This document shows, one piece after another, positions 4,091 through 39,109 of a DNA stretch of 42,447 bases (position 1 is its first letter; every line of letters starts with the position of its first letter). The notes beneath the pieces are model-generated. The model was given only the letters and a program-made list of their open reading frames with translations, did not search any database and was not told where the DNA came from. The stretch is taken from the NCBI RefSeq assembly GCF_001194135.2, contig NC_068989.1, positions 75,469,132 through 75,511,578 of the forward strand, written 5' to 3'. Both the position numbers and the translations under genes were made by a program. The stretch comes from Octopus bimaculoides. Taxonomy: Eukaryota.

Positions 4091-4287
4091 GACCAGGAGG
4101 CGGTGAGCTGGAAAAATATTACATGAGATGTTAACATTTTTCATCACACATAATTGTGACTTGGTCACTAAAACTATTTCACTGCAACTGTTTGAAAGTT
4201 TAATACAGACAATACCCAAGATTTATACTTTCAATTTTTGTCACTTCTTGTTCTGTCTGTCTAAAATGAAATATTTTTGCAGTCGTA

Positions 4288-4662
4288 AGAGTGACTGTGT
4301 GGTAAGAAGCTTGCTTCCCAACCACATGGTCCCGGGTTCAGTCCCACTGCTTGGCACCTTGGGCACATGTTGTCTACTATAGCCTCGGACTGATCAAAGC
4401 CTTGTGAGCGGATTTGGTAGACGAAAACTGAAAGAAGCTTGTTGTATATATATGTGTGTGTGTTTGTTTGTTCCTCTATCATTGCTTGACAACCCATGTT
4501 GGTGTGTTTATGTTCCTGTATCTTAGCTGTTCAGCAAAAGTGAGTGATAGAATAAGTACTAGGCTTACAAAGAATAAGTCCTGGGGTCGATTTGTTTGAC
4601 TAAAGGCAGTGCTCCAGCATGGCTGCAGTCAAATGATTGAAACAAGTAAAAGAATAAAGAGA
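4288..4662 (+). mobile_element. tRNA-headed SINE family A (internal TA/TG microsatellite, GAGTAAAA tail)
   Basis: gtgtggtaagaagcttgcttcccaaccacatggtcccgggttcagtccc head; aaactgaaagaagc before the microsatellite; ctggggtcgatttg tail. Confidence 0.85.
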
Positions 4663-5934: not shown

Positions 5935-6356
5935 TGTAGCTGATGCCAGTGCCGCCTGACTGGCACCCTTGCTGGTGGCATGTAAAAAGCACCATTCGTA
6001 CGTATATGATGCCAGTGTTGCCTGAGTGGCTTCTGTGCTGATGGCACATAAAAAGCACCATTTGAGTGTCGTCAATGCCAGTGCCACCTGACTGGCTCCC
6101 GTACCGGTGGCAAGTAAAAACACCATTCGAGCATGGCTGATGCCAGTGCTGCATGACTGGCCCCCTGTGCTGGTGGCACGTAAAAAGCACTCACTACACT
6201 CTCAGAGTGATTGGCATTAGGAAGGACATCCAGCTGTAGAAACCTTGCCAGAGCAGATTGGAGCCTGGTGCAACCCCCTGTCTTGCCAGTCCTCAGTCAA
6301 ATCGTCCAACCCATACCAGCATGGAAAGCAGATGTTAAACGACAACGATGACGATG
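5935..6356 (+). mobile_element. Family B retroposon with four tandem 65-66-nt modules
   Basis: (gatgccagtg..tgactggc..gtgctggtggcacgtaaaaagcacc)x4, then cactacactctcagagtg..gttaaacgac. Confidence 0.85.
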
Positions 6357-10648: not shown

Positions 10649-10819
10649 GGCACAGGAATGGCTGTGTGGTAAGTAGCTTGCTTACCAGCCACATGGTTCC
10701 GGGTTCAGTCCCACTGCGTGGCACCTTGGGCAAGTGTCTTCTACTATAGCCTCGGGCTGACCAAAGCCTTGTAAGTGGATTTGGTAGACGGAAACTAAAA
10801 GAAGCCTGTCGTATATATG

Positions 10820-10850
<31 letters not shown>

Positions 10851-11050
10851 CTGTGTTTGTCCCCCCAACATCGCGTGACAACCGATGGTGGTGTGTTTAT
10901 GTCCCCGTAACTTAGTGGTTCGGCAAAAGAGACTGATAGAATAAGTACTAGGCTTACAAAGAATAAGTCCTGGGGTCGATTTGCTCGACTAAAAGTGTTG
11001 CACCAGCATGGCCACAGTCAAAATGACTGAAACAAGTAAAAGAGTAAAGA
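10649..11050 (+). mobile_element. SINE family A, full length, inserted in a MITE
   Basis: Near-identical to 11918-12384. Confidence 0.9.
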
Positions 11051-11534
11051 CAACGTAGTTTGGCAAAAATATGGTAACAAAAGGGTTAAAGTGATCTGAA
11101 TGACAACTTTACATCAAAATTTCTTGTTAATTTATGTTCCGAACACCAGCTTAATGGCGACAGAGTTATTTTACTAATTTCTGCATAATTTTCAAAATCA
11201 ATTGAAACAAAGGCAGCGAATTTCAGCAGAAATATGATAACAAAAGGGATTAAGCATATGACTTTATTCACTTGGATAGGTTTCAAATGAAGAAAACAAA
11301 GCTGCTTGTACATATTAATTTGTTTTCAGATTATGCTTGAAAAGCTTTAAATGCAATAGCTGTCTTCACTGATAAAAAAATCTATGTTTTAACACTTGTG
11401 CGTTTTAACCCAAGGTGCCATGCAGTGGGATTGAACCCTAAAATCATGTGGTTGGAAAGCAAATTTCTTAACCTGATGGTCATACCTGCACCTATATAAA
11501 ACTAGTTATTAGTCAGTATTATATTGTAGCATAA

Positions 11535-12384: not shown

Positions 12385-13357
12385 GGGCTGAACCTGAAAC
12401 TATGTGGTTGGGAAGCCAACTTCTTAACCACACAGCCATGGAAAGGAAAAAAAAAAACAGAAAATACAAACCAAAACAGAACCATGGTTTTCTTTGAAAC
12501 AGTGAACTGTGGTTGTACTTGGAAAGAATGAAAATAAACTAAATAGGATTCTACTCAATCTTGAATGATTTCCAAGTTCTTGGAACAATGGCTAAGATAT
12601 TCAGGTGCAAGTCAATTAAGAATTCATAAATAATTTATTCCAACTTTTGTTTCCTTATTCTAAAGATTTCCTTATTTTTCTTTATGTATTATATCTGATG
12701 TGGCCTGGTGGTTAGGCTGTTGCACTCACAATTGCTAGATAATGGGTTCAATTCCCACACCAAGTGGTGCAGTGGTGCATTCTGTTCTTGAGCAAACACT
12801 TCATTTCACATTGCTCCTGCACCCTGCTTTTGATCAGTGAGTGCAGGGCGGAATGTTAGCTTGCTTGCCTAGCCAGCAGGGCGAGATCATCTGAAGGCTA
12901 AAATGCTGCAAAGTTCATCGTGACTAGCGATGTGTGACAATATCCAATAGTTTGGTTGGTCATATGATTATGTGATTATATCTGATGTGAAGTCAATAAC
13001 TTGATAATACTGATTAGGCTGTTATTAATATTAGCCATATATGGAGTTGGTGGTAGTGGTGTATGCATTGGAGAACCGCTATAGTCATTTGACATACTAG
13101 AAATAACTGCTGAATGTCCCTCATGTTACACATCACAGTCTTAAATAAACTATACATTAAATCAGTGGTTTTTTTCATGGTAGAGGCTAGATCCCCTAAA
13201 AGTGTGGTTGTGAAAATTGAAAAGCAAATAAGCAAATTGCTGTTTTTAATGCAATTAGATGATGTTGAGCTTTTAGAAACTTATCCTACACCATGGAAAA
13301 GAAAGAAGAATCACATGGGTGCAAACTCAGTTTTGTTTTTCGTCATTATTAAAGGGT

Positions 13358-17596: not shown

Positions 17597-17733
17597 TTGA
17601 AAACTGCTTCCCAACCACATGGCTTCAAGTTCAGTACTACCGTGTAAGATCTTGAGCAAGTGTCTTCTAATATAACCTTGGACTGGTCAAAACCTTGTGT
17701 GTGGGTTTGGTAGATGGAAACTGAAAGAAGCCT

Positions 17734-17779
<46 letters not shown>

Positions 17780-17975
17780 TTTGTCTTTGAATTTGTCCTT
17801 TGCCACTGCTTGACAACTGGTGTTGGTTTGTTTATGTCTTTGTAACTTGGCAGTTCAGCAAAAGAGAACAAGAGAATAAGTACCAGACTTTAAAGAAAAG
17901 AAAATTGGGGGTGATTTGTTTTTCTAAACTCTTCAAGGCAGTGCACCCACATGACCACAGACCAGTGACCGAAAC
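17597..17975 (+). mobile_element. SINE family A (older), abutting a family B copy
   Basis: Same blocks with a (TG)n core. Confidence 0.8.
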
Positions 17976-18350
17976 ATCGTCATCATCATCATCATCATTT
18001 AATATCCATTGTCCATGCTGGCATGGGTTGGACAGTTTGACTGGGCTGGCCTGCTGGAAGGCTGTGCCAGGCTCCAGTCTGATTTGGCATGGTCTTCTAT
18101 AGCCGGATGCCCTTCCTAACGCCAACTACTTCAAGAGTATAATGAGTGCTTTTATGTGCTACTGGCACAGGTGCCATTTGCATGACACCTGTATCTGCCA
18201 CTGCTGCTGTTTTGCTTGGCTTGATGGGTCTTCTTCTCAAGCACGACATAATGCCAAAGGTCTTGGTCATTGCCTCTGTGAGACCCAACTCTTGAAAGGA
18301 ACTCGACCACTTTGCCTCCATGAGGCCCAGCGCTCGAAAGGAACTCCGCC
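17975..18350 (-). mobile_element. Family B retroposon
   Basis: (cat)n tail, ccatgctggcatgggttggac, gcccttcctaacgccaac. Confidence 0.82.
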
Positions 18351-19522: not shown

Positions 19523-19915
19523 GGCATAGGAGCGGCTGTGTGGTAATTAGCTTGCTTATGAACCACATGCTTCCGGGTTCAGTCCCACTGCGTGGCACTT
19601 TGGGCAAGTGTCTTCTACTATAGCCTCGGGCTCACCAAAGCCTTGTGAGTGGATTTGGTAGATGGAAACTGAAAGAAGCCTGTTGTATATATGCATGTGT
19701 GTATATGTTTGTGTGTCTGTGTTTGCCTCAACATTGCTTGACAACTGATGCTGGTGTGTTTACGTCCCTGTAACTTAGTGGTTCGGCAAAAGAGACTAAT
19801 AGTATAAGTACTAGGCTTCCAAATAATAAGTCCTGGGGTCAATTTGCTCGACTAAAAGCGGTGCTCCAGCATGGCCACAGTCAAATGACTAAAACAAGTA
19901 AAAGAGTAAAAAAGT
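19523..19915 (+). mobile_element. SINE family A, full length
   Basis: Same blocks. Confidence 0.9.
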
Positions 19916-20442
19916 AATAGAAATGATAGGAGTTTTTAGACATCAAATGGCTGTCTATAAGGTTCCCACCCTCTGAGTAAAATAGCAACCAAAGGGGTCT
20001 GTAGGCAAAAAATGGTTGAGAATCACTGCAGTTGACAGAAAGGACATTTGGCTATGGAAAATTATGCCCCAACATACTAATGTAACCTTGAAAAATTGAC
20101 ATTAAAACAACAATGTGTATGATGTTGATTTAGTCAATTTGATTCCGGTACTTGGCTGCTACTTGAGTTTTATCAATGTAGATGTAAATGCTTTGTTTTT
20201 CATTTTATAAATGGTTTATCTCTAATGATGTTGCTAACTGGCCCAAAAATGTTATAATATGAACAAAGAGGGTACTTGAAATATCTTTCCTGGTGTGTAG
20301 GAAATTCATTGTTATCACTGTTAAATTTATGTTTATTTATTCATTCATTCATTTATTTTTTTTAAAAGCTTTTGTTTTCAGTTCCAGTGTTTTTTTCCAC
20401 TTCTAAATTAGTGCAATATTATTTTTGTTTATTCTTTTGCAG

Positions 20443-20557
20443 TGACCCCAACACCATATTTCGGGGTAATACTCTAGTCACTAAATTAATTGATGAGTTA
20501 ATGAAGCTAGTCGGATTACCATATTTACAAGACACAATAAAGTCAATAATTGATGAG
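20443..20557 (+). CDS. RASA3: RASA3-like exon (arginine finger)
   Basis: ttttgcag| [38 protein letters not shown] |gtaagg; phase 2 to 0. Confidence 0.96.
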
Positions 20558-20697
20558 GTAAGGACTTTTAATCAGAAAGCAGCCTTAGAAAAGTGCAGTT
20601 TGCTGTTATTTTTTTTTTTTTGGAATATCTCTTCCTGGTGCAAGTTTTGTTTTTTGATTTAAAAAAAAAATTTTTTTTTTCACATTTTAGAAATTAA

Positions 20698-21060: not shown

Positions 21061-21253
21061 CTACTACAGTGGCTTGATGCTTGTGGCATCTCCAATTAAA
21101 ACCAGAAGATTTTTATAAAGGAATCATTTTTAGTTTGCTTTTATATAGATGTCTTCTCTATACTTGATACCAGCGTTTTGTTTTGTTTTTAACTGAATTC
21201 TTTAACAATCTCCGATGCATGTATCATAATCTGTGTACCTTTCCTATTTGTAG

Positions 21254-21328
21254 ATTTGTACAGATCACCGATCGTGTGAGATTGATCCAACCAAATTAAA
21301 GGATGGTGAAAACATTATCACAAACATG
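21254..21328 (+). CDS. RASA3: RASA3-like exon (RasGAP)
   Basis: tttgtag| ICTDHRSCEIDPTKLKDGENIITNM |gtaaaa; phase 0 to 0. Confidence 0.94.
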
Positions 21329-21385
21329 GTAAAAATCATCCTTCTTTCTTTTTTTTTTATCCCCCCCNNNNNNNNNNNNNNNNNN

Positions 21386-21604
21386 CCCTTCGACTGGCCC
21401 CTGTGCCGGTGGCACGTAAAAAGCACCCACTACGCTCTCGGAGTGGTTGGCGTTAGGAAGGGCATCCAGCTGTAGAAACCATGCCAAACCGGATTGGAGC
21501 CTGGTGCAGCCTACTGGCTTGCCAGTCCTCAGTTGAACCGTCCAACCCATCCCAACGTGGAAAACAGATGTTAAACAATGATGATGATGATGATGATGAT
21601 GATG
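21386..21604 (+). mobile_element. Family B retroposon, young
   Basis: gtgccggtggcacgtaaaaagcacccactac..gttaaacaat(gat)n. Confidence 0.88.
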
Positions 21605-22162: not shown

Positions 22163-22589
22163 CATCATCATCATCATCATCATCGTTTAACGTCCGCTTT
22201 CCATGCTAGCATGGGTTGGACGATTTGACTGAGGACTGGTGAAACCGGATGGCAACACCAGGCTCCAGTCTGATTTGGCAGAGTTTCTACAGCTGGATGC
22301 CCTTCCTAACGCCAACCACTCAGAGAGTGTAGTGGGTGCTTTTACGTGTCACCTGCACGAAAACGGCCACGCTCGAAATGGTGTCTTTTATGTGCCACCC
22401 TCACAAGCCAGTCCAGGGGCACTGGCAACGATCTCGCTCAAAAATCCTACAGGAGCCAGTCAGGCGGTACTGGCAACGGCCACGCTCAAAATGGTGCATC
22501 TCATGTGCCACCCGCACAAGAACCAGTCCAGGGGCACTTGCAACGATCTTACTTGGCTTGCCGGGTCTTCTCACGCACAGCACATTTCC
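22163..22589 (-). mobile_element. Family B retroposon with tandem modules, young
   Basis: Reverse complement of family B, runs into an N-gap. Confidence 0.88.
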
Positions 22590-22691
22590 NNNNNNNNNNN
22601 NNNNNNNNNNNNNNNNNNNNNNNNNNNNNNNNNNNNNNNNNNNNNNNNNNNNNNNNNNNNNNNNNNNNNNNNNNNNNNNNNNNNNNNNNNN
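22590..22691. other. Assembly gap (others at 21368-21385, 27941-27952, 33334-33529, 37984-38020)
   Basis: Runs of N, all inside or next to repeats; spliced phases are continuous across them, so no exon appears to be missing. Confidence 1.
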
Positions 22692-23619: not shown

Positions 23620-23743
23620 GAGCATCTAAAGTCATATGTAGATAAAATGTTTCAAGCAATAACAACATCTGGTTTTGCCTGTCCACAAGTGATGTGTGAA
23701 GTTTTTTACACATTAAAAGAAGCAGCCAGAAAACACTTCCCAG
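23620..23743 (+). CDS. RASA3: RASA3-like exon (RasGAP)
   Basis: tcaacag| EHLKSYVDKMFQAITTSGFACPQVMCEVFYTLKEAARKHFP(D) |gtatgt; phase 0 to 1. Confidence 0.95.
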
Positions 23744-23864: not shown

Positions 23865-24275
23865 TACTCTTTACTCTTACTCTTTTACTTGTTTCATTCA
23901 TTTGACTGTGGCCATGCTGGAGCACCGCCTTTAGTCGAGCAAATCGACCCCAGGACTTATTCTTTGTAAGCCTAGTATTTATTCTCTTGGTCTCTTTTAC
24001 AGAACCGCTAAGTTACAAGGACGTAAACACACTAGCATCGGTTGTCAAGCAATGCTGGGAGAACAAACACAGACATACAAACACAGACACACACACACAC
24101 ATATATATACATATATACGACGGGCTTCTTTCAGTTTCCATCTACCAAATCCACTCACAAGGCTTTGCTCGGCTTGAGGCTATAGTAGAAGATACTTGCC
24201 GAAGGTGCCACGCTGTGGGACTGAACCCGGGCCCATGTGGTTCGTAAGCAAACTACTTACCACACAGCCACTCCT
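23865..24275 (-). mobile_element. SINE family A, full length, reverse
   Basis: Reverse complement of the family A blocks. Confidence 0.9.
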
Positions 24276-24624
24276 ATATTAACTATTAGTTCAAATCTTA
24301 CTGTATCTCATTGTATTGTGTCCTGGGCAAGGTACATAATGCTTTTTCTCAGCCTGTTAAACTGACCACATCTCCCCACTTACTTCTAGTTGAGTGGTTT
24401 GTCACACGAAGGGTTTTTAGTTGTTTCATTGCTGAAATTATTTATAAATATCCAAATTTTTAAAATTCATCCCAATATCAAGACTTAAAATACACCACTG
24501 CCACCTCAGTGTACTGGATGCTTTTTTTTGTGGCATTAGGAAGGGCATCCAGTAGTAGGAACCATGCTAAAAGCATGGTGATGATGACTAAAAAATAATA
24601 ATTAAAAAACAAATTTAAAAATAA

Positions 24625-24897
24625 GGTGATGTTATGTTACCAACTTAATGTGGCAGTCCCATGAAAGGGAAGAATGCTACTGCTATTTAGCCCAAGGAAA
24701 CACCGTTTCCAGTTGGCCTCGACACATTTTCTATGTCTTTGTTTACAAATGGGGAGATAAGCACTTCCATCCAGCAAAGCCAGCATCCAGAGACTAGTTT
24801 CAGAGTCATTGCTCATCATCAGTTTGGAGTAGCATGGCCTGCTTGCTGTCGATGCTTATTCACTTTTGAAAACATATATATTTCAAGTGAAATCCAT
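24625..24897 (-). mobile_element. Dispersed F1 retrozyme-like copy (sub-monomer with internal hammerhead)
   Basis: Aligns by eye along its length to 36440-36720 (caacttaatgtg.cagtcccatgaa, ggcctcgacacattt, gagacaagcac.tcca, agtgaaat.catt). Confidence 0.8.
24777..24840 (-). ncRNA. Type I hammerhead ribozyme motif (family F1), catalytic core intact
   Basis: Minus strand reads AGGCCATGC-TAC-TCCAAA CTGATGA TGAG-CAATGA-CTCT GAAA CTAG TC | TCTGGA-T-GCTGGCTT. It has CUGAUGA, GAAA, a GUC triplet, stems I-III and an internal loop in stem I. Confidence 0.85.
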
Positions 24898-25214
24898 TTT
24901 TCCTTCAAACCATTTCCAGCCAGGACAAACTGGTTAGTGAACTCCTGGCTACACACTGTCTTAAAAAGAAGGAAAGGCCATAGTTGGAACAGTAGTTGGA
25001 CTATGAAAGGTCAACAGTGACTGGGCATGAAAACATTCAGATTTACATATGTATATTTAAGAAAGAAAAAGCAAAAAAACATTCATCACCATCACTTGTA
25101 AGCAAGTATACTTAGTAACATGTACCTTTTGCTAATTGTTTTAGGTCCCTATATAGTCATGAGCAGATATAGACTCTCTCTTGGCTCTCTCGGTCTTTGA
25201 CCCAGTAAAGAGCA

Positions 25215-26287: not shown

Positions 26288-26394
26288 ATAACCGAGAAGT
26301 TCGATATCAAGTTGTAAGTGGTTTTGTCTTCCTTCGGTTTTTTGCCCCAGCAATTTTAGGTCCAAAGCTTTTTGAATTACGAACCAACATGCAG
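26288..26394 (+). CDS. RASA3: RASA3-like exon (FLR signature)
   Basis: ttcccag| [35 protein letters not shown] |gtgagt; phase 1 to 0. Confidence 0.96.
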
Positions 26395-27203: not shown

Positions 27204-27281
27204 GATGCAACGACCAATCGAGCCTTAACTCTCATCTCTAAAGCAATACAGGGACTTGGAAATCTAGTCAGTTCTCGTTCA
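27204..27281 (+). CDS. RASA3: RASA3-like exon (RasGAP)
   Basis: tattcag| DATTNRALTLISKAIQGLGNLVSSRS |gttagt; phase 0 to 0. Confidence 0.93.
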
Positions 27282-27789: not shown

Positions 27790-28025
27790 GAGGTGGCGAA
27801 CTGGCAGAATTGTGTGCACACCAGGCAAAAAATGATTTGTGGTATTCTGGCTGTCTGTATGTTCTGGGTTCAAATGCTGCCGAGGTCGACTTTACCTCTC
27901 ATCCTTTTAGGGTCAATAAAATAAGTATCAGGTGAGCACTNNNNNNNNNNNNGATGTAATTGATTTATGCACCCCTACAAAAAAAATTGCTGACCTTCTG
28001 TCAAAATTGGAAATCAGTATTATTG
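27790..28025 (+). mobile_element. SINE family C (spans an N-gap)
   Basis: Same head and central block. Confidence 0.8.
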
Positions 28026-31447: not shown

Positions 31448-31605
31448 CAGGAGTGGCTGTGTGGTAAGTAGCTTGCTTACCAACCACATGGTTCCGGGTT
31501 CAATCCTACTGCATGGCACTTTAGGCAAGTGTCTTCTATTATAGCTTCGGGCTGACCAAAGCCTTGTGAGTGGATTTGGTAGACGGAAACTGAAAGAATC
31601 CTGTC

Positions 31606-31653
<48 letters not shown>

Positions 31654-31865
31654 CTATGTTTGTGTGTCTGTGTTTGTCTCCCCAACATCGCTTGACAACC
31701 GATGGTGGTGTGTTTATGTCTCCGTAACTTAGCGGTTCGGCAAAAGAGACCGATAGAATAAGTATTAGGCTTCTAAAGAATAAGTCCTGGGGTCGATTTG
31801 CTCGACTGAAGGCGGTGCTCCAGCATGGCTGCAGTCAAATGACTGAAACAAGTAAAAGAGTAAAA
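31448..31865 (+). mobile_element. SINE family A, full length
   Basis: Same blocks. Confidence 0.9.
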
Positions 31866-33333: not shown

Positions 33334-33549
33334 NNNNNNNNNNNNNNNNNNNNNNNNNNNNNNNNNNNNNNNNNNNNNNNNNNNNNNNNNNNNNNNNNNN
33401 NNNNNNNNNNNNNNNNNNNNNNNNNNNNNNNNNNNNNNNNNNNNNNNNNNNNNNNNNNNNNNNNNNNNNNNNNNNNNNNNNNNNNNNNNNNNNNNNNNNN
33501 NNNNNNNNNNNNNNNNNNNNNNNNNNNNNGATGATATATATATATATAT

Positions 33550-33857
33550 AGTGCTGGTGCCAGGTAAAAAGCATCCAGTCAACGCTGCAAAGTGGTTGAC
33601 ATTTGGAAGGGCATCCAGCTGTAAAAACCATACCAAATCTGATTTCACCTATGCTTTTGCCATGTAAAAAGCACTCAGTCCACTCTGCTGGGTGGTTGGT
33701 GTTAGGAAGGGCATCCAGCACTAAAGACTATGCCAAAACAGACACAGAAGCCTGGTGCAGTCTTCTGCCTGGCTGGCTCCTGACAAACCATCCAATCCAT
33801 GCCAACATGAAAGATGGACATTAAACAATGATGATGATGATGATGATGATGATGATT
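33550..33857 (+). mobile_element. Family B retroposon
   Basis: Two aaaaagca modules, aggaagggcatccag, (GAT)n tail. Confidence 0.8.
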
Positions 33858-36362: not shown

Positions 36363-36955
36363 TTTAAATTTAGAAATAATGCATTTCTAAATCTCTCAGA
36401 GAGATTTATGCAGCAGTGATACGATGAAGTAGTTGTATGCTGTCAACTTAATGTGACAGTCCCATGAAGGTAATAATACTACTGTTGGTTAGACTTAGGA
36501 AGCTGCACCGCTTCCTGTTGGCCTCGACACATTTCCTGTGTCCTTATGTTTACAAGGCGGGGGTGGGGGAGACAAGCACCTCCACCCAGCTAAGCCTGCA
36601 TCTAGAGACATGTTTCTGAGTCTTTGCTCGTCATCAATCTGGAGTAGCATGACCTGCTAGTCGAAGATGCCTGTCAAGCTCTTGTAAACATATAATAATT
36701 CTAGTGAAATACATTCACTGATTTCAAATTTAGAAATAATACATTTCTAAATCTCTGAGAGATTTATGCAGTAGTGATACGATGAAGTAGTTGTATGCTG
36801 TCAACTTAATGTGACAGTCCCATGAAGGGAATAATACTACTGTTGTTTAGACCTAGGAAACTGCACTACTTCCTGTCGGCCTTGACACATTTCCTGTGTC
36901 CTTATGTTTACAAGGGGGAGACAAGCACCTCCACCCAGCTAAGCCTGCATCCAGG
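36363..36955 (-). mobile_element. Retrozyme-like element F1, about 1.7 head-to-tail monomers (period 349-360 nt)
   Basis: 36363-36606 repeats at 36723-36955, with the hammerhead at the monomer junction and many internal hairpins. Confidence 0.8.
36592..36655 (-). ncRNA. Type I hammerhead ribozyme motif (family F1), C3U variant
   Basis: Minus strand reads GGTCATGC-TAC-TCCAGA TTGATGA CGAG-CAAAGA-CTCA GAAA CATG TC | TCTAGA-T-GCAGG. Confidence 0.82.
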
Positions 36956-37017
36956 CTTAAACATAAGGATACTTGTTGTCAGAAGTGTGTTGCTAGAAGC
37001 TTGTTAATTATTCTTTG

Positions 37018-37038
37018 TGTTTGTGTGTGTGTGTGTGT

Positions 37039-37090
<52 letters not shown>

Positions 37091-37140
37091 TAGTGTGAGA
37101 AAAATGTGAGAGAGAGAAAAAGAGAGAAAAAGAGAGAGAA
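37018..37140. repeat. (TG)n(AG)n microsatellite
   Basis: Read directly. Confidence 0.9.
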
Positions 37141-37407
37141 TGAGTGATGCAAGGGTAATGAACATGTTTGAATGTTACTTGATTTATGAGACTCCTATTT
37201 TTGTTCAGTCAATAAGAAATTAGCTTTAAGTAATGTCAAGACAAAATTAGCTGTGGTATTTCTGATGATGATGATGATGACGCCAACGCCGATGACAGTG
37301 GTTGCGGTGGTGGTGGTGATGTTAGCGATGCTATTTGAGTTTATTTATGTAATGAAACCTATTCCGTCTACCAATTTTTTGCGTCTTCATTCTCTTCCAT
37401 TTGACAG

Positions 37408-37565
37408 TTGTAAGCACACAGACTATAATGCTGAAGGCTGCAAACCCGTGTCTGGGGGACTGCAAGTGGTAGAGATCCAAGTTGATAAGATAGATGCTGA
37501 CCGAGAAGTGGAAAAGATCCATTCTTTGTACTTCACTGCCATGGACAAACTGGAAGGAATGCAAG
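37408..37565 (+). CDS. RASA3: RASA3-like exon (Btk motif and tail)
   Basis: ttgacag| CKHTDYNAEGCKPVSGGLQVVEIQVDKIDADREVEKIHSLYFTAMDKLEGMQ |gtaaga; phase 2 to 1. Confidence 0.95.
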
Positions 37566-37694
37566 GTAAGAAGAATGGTTCTTTACCCTACATTGGATGA
37601 AATAAATCTGTTATTGCTCCAGCTTTTATTTTTTGTTGCTGTTGTTGCTCTTTTACTTCCAATGAAGTAGGTTATTTTTTTCCCTTTTCTCATA

Positions 37695-38377
37695 TTCTTT
37701 TACTTGTCTCAGTAGTCATTTGACTGCGGCCATGCAGGAGCACTGCCTTAAAAGGGTTTTTTGTTTGTTTTTAGTTTAAGAAATCGATCCCAGGAACTTA
37801 TTCTTTGTAAACATAGTACTTATTCTATCAGTCTCTTTTTGATGAACTGCTAAGTTACAGGGATGTAAACACACCGACCTCAGTTGTCTACGATGGTGGC
37901 GGGACAAACACTGACACAAATACACAACCACACAAATATATATATACATACACACACACACGACAGGCTTCTCTCAGTTTCTGNNNNNNNNNNNNNNNNN
38001 NNNNNNNNNNNNNNNNNNNNTATATATGCCGGTGGCACGTAAAAAGCACCCACTACACTCTCAGAGTGGTTGGCATTAGGAAGGGCATCCAGCTGTAGAA
38101 ACTCTGCCAGATCAGATTGGAGCCTGGTGCAGCCTTCTGGCTTGCCCGTCCTCAGTCAAATCGTCCAACTCATGCTAGCATGGAAAGCAGATGTTAAACG
38201 ATGATGATGATGAATATAAATATATATATACATACACACACACACGACAGGCTTCTCTCAGTTTCTGTCTACCAAATCCACTCACAAGGCTTTGGTTGGC
38301 CCAAGGCCATTCAGTGGGATTGAGCCTGGAACCATGTGATTGGGAAGCAAGCTTCTTAGCACACAGCCATGCCTGTG
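37695..38377 (-). mobile_element. SINE family A interrupted by an N-gap and a + strand family B copy (38027-38213)
   Basis: Family A tail at 37695-37983 and head at 38221-38377. Confidence 0.78.
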
Positions 38378-38433: not shown

Positions 38434-38800
38434 CTGTAATGGAGATGTTGAATATATTTCTGTTCGCTAGATGTAGGGGTTCGTCAGAGTTCTGTTTTGA
38501 CACCCACTCTGTTTAATGTCTACATGGACTGGATACCCTGCCTGGTGGTGGCTCAGTTGAACTGCAAAACACTTATTGGTGAAACTAGGACTACTGTCCT
38601 AAATTTTGCAGATGATGCAGAGTTTCTTGAAGAGCCTCTGGAAGTCTTAAGGAGTACTCTCCTTTCACTGAGTGAAGAATCGGAACCACTTGACCTCAGA
38701 GTTTCTTGGGACATGATAAGGATTCAGTCTTTTGTTGGGTTCCTGGGAGACTCCATCTCTGTTGCAGGTGAGAATGTTGAATTCACTGACTGCTTTGTCA
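38434..38800 (+). pseudogene. RTE-type LINE reverse transcriptase fragment
   Basis: GVRQSSVLTPTLFNVYMDW..LNFADD..LRVSW..I..GENVE corresponds to the RT motifs GVRQGCVLAPTLF and (Y/F)ADD; isolated fragment. Confidence 0.85.
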
Positions 38801-39109
38801 AACCCAGCTAACCAGCAGTAGAACTAAGTGTAGATCAAGAATAAGAAGGCCGGATAATATCCATAGTCTTAATGTGGTTACACTTGAAATTCCAGCTGGA
38901 AAGCTTAACGAGGCTTACTTCTGATAAGACCCTATTTGGGAGATACCTAAGGACTCTACCCCCATGCCCCACTATGGAATAGTGGTAGGGGAGGATGGAT
39001 GGATCTACATAGATCTTTAGGGGTGATGTTTAAGCTGAGTTTCTCTTGTGTTAAGCTGATGCCACAGCACCAGAACAGGAAGATAGTCTTTTGCAACCAG
39101 AATCTTTTG

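What the first reader, a model, noticed from the sequence alone, without database searches (positions are those of the whole stretch)
36363..36969. Retrozyme-like 1.7-mer with a type I hammerhead ribozyme in an octopus-like RASA3 intron (family F1)
Seen in sequence: a 349-360-nt unit repeats head-to-tail on the minus strand, with a complete type I hammerhead fold at the junction. Stem I is TCCAGA/TCTAGA with a TAC/T internal loop and a distal helix. The core is TTGATGA, stem II is CGAG-CAAAGA-CTCA, then GAAA, a palindromic ACATGT stem III and a GUC triplet (predicted cut between 36607 and 36606). The monomer is strongly self-complementary: a perfect 12-bp CTTGTAAACATA/TATGTTTACAAG helix (36903-36914 with 36681-36692), a 10-bp GGTGCTTGTC/GACAGGCATC helix, and hairpins GACAC/GTGTC, CTGTCA/TGACAG, TAAATCTC/GAGATTTA and TTTAGAAAT/ATTTCTAAA. 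Established: non-LTR retrozymes of some metazoans (cnidarians, mussel, amphibians) are tandem monomers of roughly 150-400 nt with type I hammerheads that produce circular RNAs, and this fold resembles the Schistosoma SMalpha hammerhead. Inference: this is a cephalopod retrozyme family copied from a circular or multimeric RNA. I cannot tell whether it has already been catalogued.
Basis: partly seen in the sequence, partly recalled or inferred. Interest (0 to 1): 0.92.

Follow-up and report, generated by a model that had tools for sequence, protein, structure and literature searches.

The report
Decayed hammerhead-ribozyme retrozyme copy in an intron
This is an old, mutated genomic copy of a small non-coding mobile element (a non-LTR "retrozyme") that carries a self-cutting hammerhead RNA motif; the kind is already known in animals, and this particular copy is probably no longer able to cut itself.

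Summary
On the minus strand, 36955-36362 is a head-to-tail 1.7-mer of a ~350-nt unit, and its two copies are 94% identical. One type I hammerhead (HHR) fold lies at 36643-36601, with the predicted cut between 36607 and 36606. A second family copy, 78% identical, lies at 24909-24610 (-) and also spans the HHR.

A generic HHR descriptor hits only these two sites in the window. Dinucleotide shuffles give at most 0.007 hits per window. A covariance model built only from published, cleavage-tested coral, mussel and axolotl retrozyme HHRs ranks them first (20.7 bits, E=8e-4) and second (13.3 bits, E=0.14). The circular monomer folds far below shuffles (z=-5.6).

The reported locus is degenerate. Its core reads UUGAUGA (U3 instead of C3), helices I and II each carry a C.A mismatch, and it holds a single HHR, so it cannot release a monomer. 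Rfam's hammerhead models do not match either copy.

The upstream copy starts 0-1 nt from the predicted cleavage site. Both loci end just after the same 13-bp hairpin. This fits reverse transcription of processed retrozyme RNA.

The host is a RasGAP gene intron, with the element antisense. The species could not be identified, and no further copies could be retrieved.

Verdict: a new member of a known kind, of moderate interest.

The parts
36607..36955 (-). Locus 1, first copy in RNA sense. It is a complete 349-nt unit running from HHR position 1.1/1.2 to C17.
   Evidence: nhmmer 402 bits
36362..36606 (-). Locus 1, second and partial copy (unit positions 1 to ~235). It is 94% identical to the first copy and carries a 9-nt insertion (CCACCCCCG) and a 2-nt insertion.
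36601..36643 (-). Degenerate type I hammerhead of locus 1: helix I UCCAGA/UCUAGA (C.A mismatch), core UUGAUGA (U3), helix II CGAG-CAAAGA-CUCA (C.A at the base), GAAA, helix III A-[CAUG]-U, and C17. The predicted cut is between 36607 and 36606. The distal part of helix I extends to about 36655 and 36588.
   Evidence: (13.3 bits, E=0.14)
36366..36394 (-). 13-bp hairpin (AGAUUUAGAAAUG-CAU-UAUUUCUAAAUUU). It sits 0-4 nt before the 3' boundary of locus 1. The same hairpin in the first copy is at 36726-36754.
   Evidence: (I4)
24610..24909 (-). Locus 2, a second and diverged family copy (78% to locus 1). It is about 1.0 unit, colinear with the circularly permuted unit (positions ~228-349 then 1-231), and has a ~47-nt internal deletion.
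24786..24828 (-). Hammerhead of locus 2 with a canonical core: UCCAAA / CUGAUGA / UGAG-CAAUGA-CUCU / GAAA / A-[CUAG]-U / C | UCUGGA. The predicted cut is between 24792 and 24791.
   Evidence: only strict-descriptor hit; top hit, 20.7 bits, E=7.6e-4
36958..36972 (-). 15-nt stretch in the 5' flank that is the reverse complement (14/15) of unit positions 46-60. It may be an inverted scrap of the element. Its status is uncertain.
   Evidence: I8; 2/500 shuffles

Best explanation
Both loci are old, dead-on-arrival retrotransposed copies of a ~350-nt non-autonomous, non-coding element of the non-LTR retrozyme class. They lie antisense in introns of a RasGAP gene.

Inferred life cycle of the source family:
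1. A tandem master locus elsewhere is transcribed into multimeric RNA.
2. Type I hammerheads cut after GUC. Because helix III is a single A-U pair capped by a palindromic tetraloop, two hammerheads probably pair through ACAUGU/ACAUGU and act as a dimer.
3. The ~350-nt monomers are circularised by a host tRNA ligase and fold into a highly paired structure.
4. A reverse transcriptase from an autonomous element, most likely a Penelope-like element, copies circular or oligomeric RNA. It starts just 3' of a 13-bp hairpin, giving 1.0- to 1.7-unit cDNAs that integrate.

Locus 1 is a 1.7-mer whose 5' end is the ribozyme-generated RNA end. It has since taken C3U and helix mismatches and has only one hammerhead, so it is very probably inactive.

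Shown: the repeat anatomy, the motif and its significance, the thermodynamic stability, the dispersed copies and the boundaries. Inferred: cleavage, circularisation, and the source and start site of the reverse transcriptase.
For: - The head-to-tail unit is confirmed.
- The second dispersed copy has different ends and is colinear with the permuted unit.
- A generic type I descriptor hits only the two family copies on either strand of 42 kb. Shuffles give 0 (strict) and 0.007 (relaxed) hits per window.
- CM R1 was built only from coral, mussel and axolotl retrozyme HHRs that were shown to cleave (NAR 2020 Supplementary Table 2). It ranks locus 2 first (20.7 bits, E=7.6e-4) and locus 1 second (13.3 bits). 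Noise tops out at 12.8 bits in the window and 12.4 bits in 51 kb of unrelated DNA.
- The architecture equals the published 'canonical metazoan' type: helix I of 6 bp, helix II of 4 bp, helix III of 1-2 bp capped by a palindromic loop (PMC4209133).
- GAAACAUGUC|U is identical in the axolotl Ax330 ribozyme. A U.U pair at the base of helix II is described for axolotl HHR_Amex2.
- Loop 3 reads CAUG in locus 1 and CUAG in locus 2. This double change keeps the 6-nt palindrome.
- Each HHR-breaking base in one copy is canonical in another copy: C3, G2.2 and G1.4. 10.1/11.1 could be an ancestral U-A pair.
- Unit GC is 40%. ORFs reach at most 61 aa and have no homologues.
- The circular MFE has z=-5.6.
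- Homology of locus 1 begins at HHR position 1.1/1.2, that is 0-1 nt from the scissile bond. By my own arithmetic, the chance of this is about 2-3 in 349.
- Both loci end at ...AAAUUU(G/A), directly after the same hairpin.
- Partial tandems with 5' truncation are the hallmark of PLE-type insertion (PMC8557442). Animal retrozymes have been linked to PLEs (bioRxiv 10.64898/2026.07.22.740005).
Against: - Rfam hammerhead models do not match either copy, at gathering score or at E<=10 on 131-141-nt stretches.
- On its own, the locus 1 HHR is not distinguishable from noise with R1 (E=0.14).
- Only two loci and two HHR instances are available, so there is no family consensus and no real covariation statistics.
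- The descriptor was written after the sequences had been seen.
- Conservation of the long-range structure between the loci is about what neutral decay predicts: 62/84 pairs kept and 2 compensatory changes.
- No target-site duplication is visible.
- The 3' boundary of locus 1 is blurred. The flank weakly resembles unit sequence in two registers.
- No PLE or other autonomous partner is seen in the window.
- No expression or cleavage data exist.
Confidence: 0.8

Rival explanations
1. The repeat is a terminal piece (pseudo-LTR plus 3' end) of an autonomous Penelope-like element whose body has been truncated away. It would then not be a stand-alone retrozyme.
For: PLE insertions are typically 5'-truncated partial tandems. 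They often carry an inverted scrap at the 5' end, a 30-40-bp tail and a bias for microsatellites, and they hold hammerheads in their pLTRs. Locus 1 is a partial tandem. It has a 15-nt inverted match in its 5' flank and a possible tail. It sits 60 nt from a (CT)n(CA)n tract. Xenopus retrozymes are sister to PLE pLTRs.
Against: The units abut directly, with no RT or GIY-YIG ORF between or beside them. Locus 2 is colinear with the circularly permuted unit, so the ~350 nt are the whole element. The hammerhead has the canonical architecture, with a 6-bp helix I and a 4-bp helix II. It does not have the PLE min-HHR architecture: helix II of 7-8 bp, helix I of 4-5 bp, and an extra base between positions 9 and 10.1.
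Confidence: 0.1
2. It is an ordinary SINE or local segmental tandem duplication, and the hammerhead-like string is a chance or relic resemblance with no ribozyme history.
For: Rfam hammerhead models are silent. Locus 1 has U3 and helix mismatches. There is a box-A-like TTAGCTGGGTGG at unit positions 14-25. The window is full of SINE-like repeats.
Against: The motif recurs in the diverged copy with a perfect CUGAUGA...GAAA...UC core and scores 8 bits above noise with an independent model. Chance expectation is at most 0.007 per window. Loop 3 stays palindromic through a double change. The 5' end of locus 1 falls on the predicted scissile bond. There is no tRNA match, and the box-A-like string is not conserved in locus 2.
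Confidence: 0.07
3. Locus 1 is itself a working retrozyme locus that still yields self-cleaved and circular RNA, as in the first reader's stronger reading.
For: It is a head-to-tail arrangement with a strongly structured monomer. Rare natural core variants are still thought to work in vivo (PMC7151607).
Against: The locus holds only one hammerhead, so two cuts cannot release a unit. Its core has C3U plus C.A mismatches in helices I and II. It scores at noise level. The 5.6% divergence between its two copies, mostly transitions, points to long neutral decay.
Confidence: 0.05

Closest known systems
Metazoan non-LTR retrozymes (Cervera & de la Pena, NAR 2020, PMC7229834), especially the axolotl Rtz_331/HHR_Amex1 and Rtz_353/HHR_Amex2 families
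   Same: The unit is ~350 nt, AT-rich (40% GC), non-coding and arranged head-to-tail, and its predicted RNA is highly self-paired. It carries a type I hammerhead with a 6-bp helix I, a 4-bp helix II with hexaloop CAAAGA (Ax330 has CAAAAA), and a 1-bp helix III capped by a palindromic tetraloop. The string GAAACAUGUC|U is identical to Ax330. A non-Watson-Crick pair at the base of helix II occurs in HHR_Amex2 as well.
   Different: There is no sequence similarity outside the ribozyme. The host is an invertebrate-like genome, whereas the paper reports that most invertebrate retrozyme HHRs have a stabler helix III and cut as monomers. Only 1.7 units and one mutated HHR are present here, against arrays of 2 to more than 60 units. 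No expression data exist.
Penelope-like element pseudo-LTRs with min-HHRs (Cervera & de la Pena 2014, PMC4209133; Craig et al. 2021, PMC8557442)
   Same: Both form partial tandem insertions with 5' truncation and hold a hammerhead inside the repeated part. Locus 1 may also have an inverted scrap and a tail, and it lies near a microsatellite. PLEs are the probable source of the reverse transcriptase.
   Different: There is no RT/GIY-YIG ORF. The ribozyme has the canonical helix lengths, not the min-HHR ones.
Schistosoma SM-alpha and newt satellite 2 hammerhead repeats
   Same: Both are ~330-nt dispersed or tandem repeats with type I hammerheads. From my memory of the published SM-alpha ribozyme, the helix I internal loop (UAC opposite U) and the loop 2 (CAAAUA-like) look very similar. 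This is a lead, not a test.
   Different: SM-alpha has a G10.1-C11.1 pair and a longer helix III.

Membership tests
Hammerhead ribozyme, type I (canonical metazoan architecture) | Core C3-U4-G5-A6-N7-G8-A9 | tested here: inconclusive
   Locus 1 reads UUGAUGA, so it is not met. Locus 2 reads CUGAUGA, so it is met. The consensus definition is taken from PMC7151607.
Hammerhead ribozyme, type I (canonical metazoan architecture) | G12-A13-A14, an A15.1-U16.1 pair, and H17 at the cleavage site | tested here: met
   Locus 1 has GAAA-CAUG-U-C and locus 2 has GAAA-CUAG-U-C.
Hammerhead ribozyme, type I (canonical metazoan architecture) | Open helix I (~6 bp) and a closed helix II (~4 bp) | tested here: inconclusive
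   Helix I has 5 of 6 pairs in each copy (C.A in locus 1, A.C in locus 2). Helix II has 3 Watson-Crick pairs plus C.A (locus 1) or U.U (locus 2) at the base.
Hammerhead ribozyme, type I (canonical metazoan architecture) | Short helix III (1-2 bp) capped by a small palindromic loop, allowing a dimeric active form | tested here: met
   ACAUGU in locus 1 and ACUAGU in locus 2 are both 6-nt palindromes. The definition is taken from PMC4209133.
Hammerhead ribozyme, type I (canonical metazoan architecture) | Match to curated Rfam hammerhead covariance models | tested here: not met
   There is no hammerhead hit at gathering score or at E<=10.
Hammerhead ribozyme, type I (canonical metazoan architecture) | Match to a covariance model built only from experimentally cleaving retrozyme HHRs (coral, mussel, axolotl) | tested here: inconclusive
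   Locus 2 scores 20.7 bits with E=7.6e-4, so it is met. Locus 1 scores 13.3 bits with E=0.14, which is at the noise ceiling of 12.4-12.8 bits.
Hammerhead ribozyme, type I (canonical metazoan architecture) | Self-cleavage 3' of position 17 | not testable with these tools
   This needs in vitro transcription. The only indirect hint is that the locus 1 element begins at position 1.1/1.2.
Non-LTR retrozyme | Short head-to-tail repeats of 150-450 bp, low GC, and no LTR, PBS, PPT or ORF | tested here: met
   The unit is 349-360 nt in 1.7 copies with 40% GC. ORFs reach at most 61 aa and have no homologues.
Non-LTR retrozyme | At least two hammerheads in tandem, so that a monomer can be excised | tested here: not met
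   There is one HHR in locus 1 and one in locus 2. The upstream copy of locus 1 starts just after the cleavage site.
Non-LTR retrozyme | Multiple dispersed copies in the genome | tested here: inconclusive
   Two loci lie 12 kb apart in this window. The genome-wide count could not be obtained.
Non-LTR retrozyme | Highly self-paired monomer RNA | tested here: met
   The circular MFE is -110.2 kcal/mol, with z=-5.6 and 63% of bases paired.
Non-LTR retrozyme | Expression as linear and circular ~170-400-nt RNA | not testable with these tools
   No transcriptome data are available.
Penelope-like element (pLTR) | Repeats flank an RT plus GIY-YIG ORF | tested here: not met
   The units abut directly, and there is no such ORF within or beside either locus.
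Penelope-like element (pLTR) | min-HHR architecture: long helix II, short helix I, and an extra base between positions 9 and 10.1 | tested here: not met
   Helix I is 6 bp and helix II is 4 bp.

The most novel reading that the evidence does not exclude
The two insertions may record how animal retrozymes are copied. Both end within 0-4 nt after the same 13-bp hairpin, which would be a defined start site for reverse transcription. One is exactly one turn of the permuted unit, as expected for a circular template. The other stops 0-1 nt from the ribozyme's scissile bond, as expected for run-off on a self-cleaved linear oligomer. If the same pile-ups hold genome-wide, they would be sequence-level evidence for in vivo cleavage and for a specific priming site in non-LTR retrozyme mobilisation. 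The literature read here treats the mobilisation step as unresolved. They would also mark a family in a taxon, possibly cephalopods, where I found none reported.
Probability: 0.25. Interest if true: 0.6.

Novelty: new member of a known kind. Interest (0 to 1): 0.38.

Why it matters
Retrozymes are a genome-encoded source of small circular RNAs made by ribozymes rather than by back-splicing. How they are mobilised in animals is still unsettled. A family from another invertebrate lineage would widen the known distribution. This one has the weak, dimer-dependent helix III that the 2020 study stressed for amphibians.

The insertion boundaries seen here give a cheap genome-wide test of two open points: whether the ribozyme cuts in vivo, and where reverse transcription starts. 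The boundaries in question are a 5' end at the cleavage site and a shared 3' end after a hairpin.

For the host gene, the copies are antisense and intronic, and are probably inert.

Tried and rejected
- Rfam cmscan at gathering score on the whole window, and at E<=10 on 901-, 141- and 131-nt stretches. There was no hammerhead hit, only chance C/D-box and other sub-threshold matches.
- Retrieval of further family copies:
  - Two metagenome scans gave 0 hits.
  - Two viral-contig scans gave 0 hits and 6 chance 18-mer matches.
  - An exact look-up of 8 window ORFs found none in the collection.
  - A six-frame translation of both loci used as a protein query gave 0 hits.
- Species identification. 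The RasGAP exon peptide found only two short, unnamed relatives at 82-83% identity. The accessions appear in no paper.
- Adding axolotl Ax330 to the covariance model. MAFFT misplaced its gap twice, so the model uses three sequences.
- Target-site duplications. None was found at either locus.
- tRNA or SINE head. ARAGORN and Rfam were negative at both loci.
- Extra homology in the flanks. Only two borderline matches were found, and they are left as unexplained.
- A nearby autonomous element. There is only a short RT-like fragment with a FADD box at 38497-38811 (+), with no Pfam hit.

Full report
**1. What is in the sequence**

Read on the minus strand, 36955-36362 is a head-to-tail repeat. The repeat finder gives three blocks in register at spacings of 349, 358 and 360 nt: 167 nt at 93%, 41 nt at 98% and 41 nt at 93%. 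blastn aligns unit 36955-36601 to 36605-36362 at 90.6% over 244 nt. A global alignment gives 94.4% identity over 234 aligned bases, with 11 transitions, 2 transversions and insertions of 9 nt and 2 nt in the second copy. The locus is therefore a complete 349-nt unit (36955-36607) followed by about 0.7 of a unit (36606-36362). TRF did not list it, probably because it holds fewer than two copies.

**2. A second copy**

blastn and nhmmer find one more family member at 24909-24610, also on the minus strand. It is 78% identical. When its two halves are swapped it is colinear with the unit. It is therefore about one full turn of the unit, started at a different point (unit ~228-349, then 1-231), with a ~47-nt internal deletion. 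It crosses the same hammerhead junction. Nothing else in the 42 kb belongs to the family.

**3. The hammerhead**

Locus 1 reads UCCAGA-UUGAUGA-CGAG-CAAAGA-CUCA-GAAA-CAUG-U-C|UCUAGA. C17 is 36607 and U1.1 is 36606. Three features depart from the consensus C3U4G5A6N7G8A9 / G12A13A14 / A15.1-U16.1 / H17 (PMC7151607):
- Position 3 is U.
- Helix I has a C.A mismatch.
- The base of helix II is C.A.

Locus 2 reads UCCAAA-CUGAUGA-UGAG-CAAUGA-CUCU-GAAA-CUAG-U-C|UCUGGA. Its core is canonical. It has one A.C mismatch in helix I and a U.U pair at the base of helix II.

Three tests bear on whether this is more than chance.

(a) Descriptor scan. I used a generic type I descriptor: 6-bp helix I with at most 1 mismatch, NUGANGA, a 4-position helix II with the three distal pairs intact, GAAA, A-U plus 0-3 bp and a 4-7-nt loop, H17. 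On both strands of the window it hits only these two sites. In 300 dinucleotide shuffles it gave 0 hits with C3 and 0.007 hits per window with Y3. I wrote the descriptor after seeing the sequences.

(b) Independent covariance model. I took three retrozyme hammerheads shown to self-cleave, from Supplementary Table 2 of Cervera & de la Pena 2020: coral Amil224, mussel Mg353 and axolotl Ax353. I aligned them and built model R1 from them alone. With filters off on the whole window, the best hit is locus 2 (24828-24786, 20.7 bits, E=7.6e-4). The second is locus 1 (36643-36601, 13.3 bits, E=0.14). Both match the model end to end. Noise tops out at 12.8 bits in the window and at 12.4 bits in 51 kb of unrelated DNA. 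Locus 2 is therefore clearly a hammerhead of the retrozyme type. Locus 1 is recognisable only because it is the homologue of locus 2.

(c) Rfam. No hammerhead family matches, either at gathering score or at E<=10 on short stretches. This is a genuine negative and I could not explain it. I could not run a positive control or switch off Rfam's filters.

**4. Fit to the published architecture**

Cervera & de la Pena 2014 define canonical metazoan type I hammerheads as follows: helix I of 6 bp, helix II of 4 bp, and helix III of 1-2 bp capped by a small palindromic loop. This makes single motifs poor cutters and tandem motifs active as dimers. That is the architecture found here. It is not the min-HHR architecture of Penelope-like elements, which has a long helix II, a short helix I and an extra base after A9.

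Further points of agreement:
- GAAACAUGUC|U is letter-for-letter the axolotl Ax330 sequence.
- A U.U pair at the base of helix II is described for axolotl HHR_Amex2.
- Loop 3 differs between the two loci by a double change (CAUG versus CUAG) that preserves the 6-nt palindrome needed for a dimeric helix III.
- Each ribozyme-breaking base in one copy is canonical in another. C3 is in locus 2. G2.2 is in locus 1. G1.4 is in locus 2 and at the 5' end of locus 1.
- 10.1/11.1 (C.A and U.U) can be derived from a U-A pair by one change in each locus.

This argues for a canonical ancestor that has since decayed. With so few copies it remains an inference.

**5. The rest of the unit**

GC content is 40%. 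ORFs reach at most 61 aa and have no relatives. As a circle, the monomer folds to -110.2 kcal/mol against -78.8 +/- 5.6 for shuffles (z=-5.6). None of 300 shuffles and none of 38 other 350-nt segments of the window fold as low, and 63% of bases are paired.

Between loci 1 and 2, 62 of 84 comparable pairs survive, with two compensatory changes (G34-C283 to A-U; U142-A155 to C-G). This is close to what 78% identity predicts, so I see neutral decay and not selection on these copies.

**6. Boundaries**

Homology at the 5' end of locus 1 begins at hammerhead position 1.2, or at 1.1 if one transition is allowed. That is 0-1 nt from the predicted scissile bond. By my own arithmetic, the chance of this is about 2-3 in 349.

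Both loci end at ...UAAAUUU(G/A), directly after the same 13-bp hairpin (36394-36366 in locus 1). The locus 1 boundary is at 36366-36362 and the locus 2 boundary is at 24610.

- Locus 2 equals about one turn of the unit with an intact junction, as expected from a circular or multimeric template.
- Locus 1 equals 1.7 turns ending at a ribozyme-made 5' end, as expected from a self-cleaved oligomer.

A full copy preceded by a 5'-truncated copy is also the signature of Penelope-like element insertion. A 2026 preprint derives animal retrozymes from PLE pseudo-LTRs.

I found no target-site duplications. Two flank similarities remain unexplained:
- An inverted 15-mer at 36958-36972.
- A 24-nt unit-like stretch at 36361-36338.

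**7. Is this locus active?**

Almost certainly not. It has one hammerhead only, so a unit cannot be released. The core has C3U. From general knowledge of hammerhead mutagenesis, changes at C3 cost orders of magnitude in rate, because C3 pairs with G8 in the active fold. Two helices carry mismatches. The two copies have drifted 5.6% apart, mostly by transitions.

**8. Context**

Plus-strand exons at 20428-20562, 21248-21309, 23635-23708, 26296-26375 and 27216-27275 match a related contig. One carries a RasGAP signature (Pfam E=2.9e-5, below the curated cut-off). An ORF at 37253-37600 has a weak BTK motif. This fits a GAP1/RASA3-like gene. Both copies are intronic and antisense.

The organism could not be named. 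Only two unnamed relatives at 82-83% identity exist in the protein collection. 'Octopus' therefore stays unverified.

**9. What could not be done**

No further family copies could be fetched.

**10. Comparison and verdict**

It works like, and most probably is, a member of the non-LTR retrozyme class (PMC7229834). The ribozyme architecture is closest to the amphibian type.

At this locus, membership fails on one defining point: there are not at least two hammerheads. Two other points are inconclusive: a core with C3 (absent at this locus, present in locus 2) and Rfam recognition. I therefore file the locus as a dead copy of such a family.

In the held literature I found no report of such elements in cephalopods. 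Repbase or Dfam could not be checked.

Novelty: a new member of a known kind. Interest is moderate. The most useful lead is the pair of boundary coincidences, which can be tested genome-wide in minutes.

Noticed in passing
window 4286-4658, 10656-11058, 19527-19910, 23877-24276 (-), 31451-31864, 17605-17976 and others: An interspersed repeat family of ~400 nt, SINE-like, with at least 8 copies at 68-88% identity. It is far more abundant in the window than the retrozyme family.
   Followed up: no
window 6155-6356, 21392-21592, 38027-38213, 22169-22358 (-), 33648-33842, 5936-6190: A second repeat family of ~200 nt with many copies at 71-90% identity. It is partly built of a 66/132-nt tandem unit (GTGCCGGTGGCACGTAAAAAGCACC...).
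   Followed up: no
window 38497-38811 (+): A 104-aa ORF with a reverse-transcriptase-like FADD box, probably a fragment of a LINE-type element ~1.5 kb from locus 1. It has no Pfam hit at E<=0.1.
   Followed up: partly
window 20428-20562, 21248-21309, 23635-23708, 26296-26375, 27216-27275 (+); ORF 37253-37600 (+): Exons of a RasGAP gene, conserved at 76-82% nt with a 3.4-kb ENA metagenome contig (L001) whose introns are much shorter. There is also a downstream exon with a weak BTK motif. Both retrozyme copies lie antisense in its introns.
   Followed up: partly
window 37016-37139: A (TG)n(GA)n microsatellite, read on the plus strand, lies 60 nt from the 5' end of locus 1. PLE-type elements are reported to prefer microsatellite targets.
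   Followed up: no
window 12692-12767 (+): ARAGORN calls a tRNA-like fold with a 4-base anticodon loop (caca). It is probably a SINE head or a pseudo-tRNA.
   Followed up: no
window 36931-36942 (-): TTAGCTGGGTGG at unit positions 14-25 matches the pol III box A consensus TRGCNNAGTGG at 10 of 11 positions. It is not conserved in locus 2, and no box B was found.
   Followed up: partly
window 21368-21385, 22590-22691, 27941-27952, 33334-33529, 37984-38020: Five runs of N (assembly gaps). The window therefore comes from a scaffolded draft assembly. None of the gaps touches the two loci.
   Followed up: no
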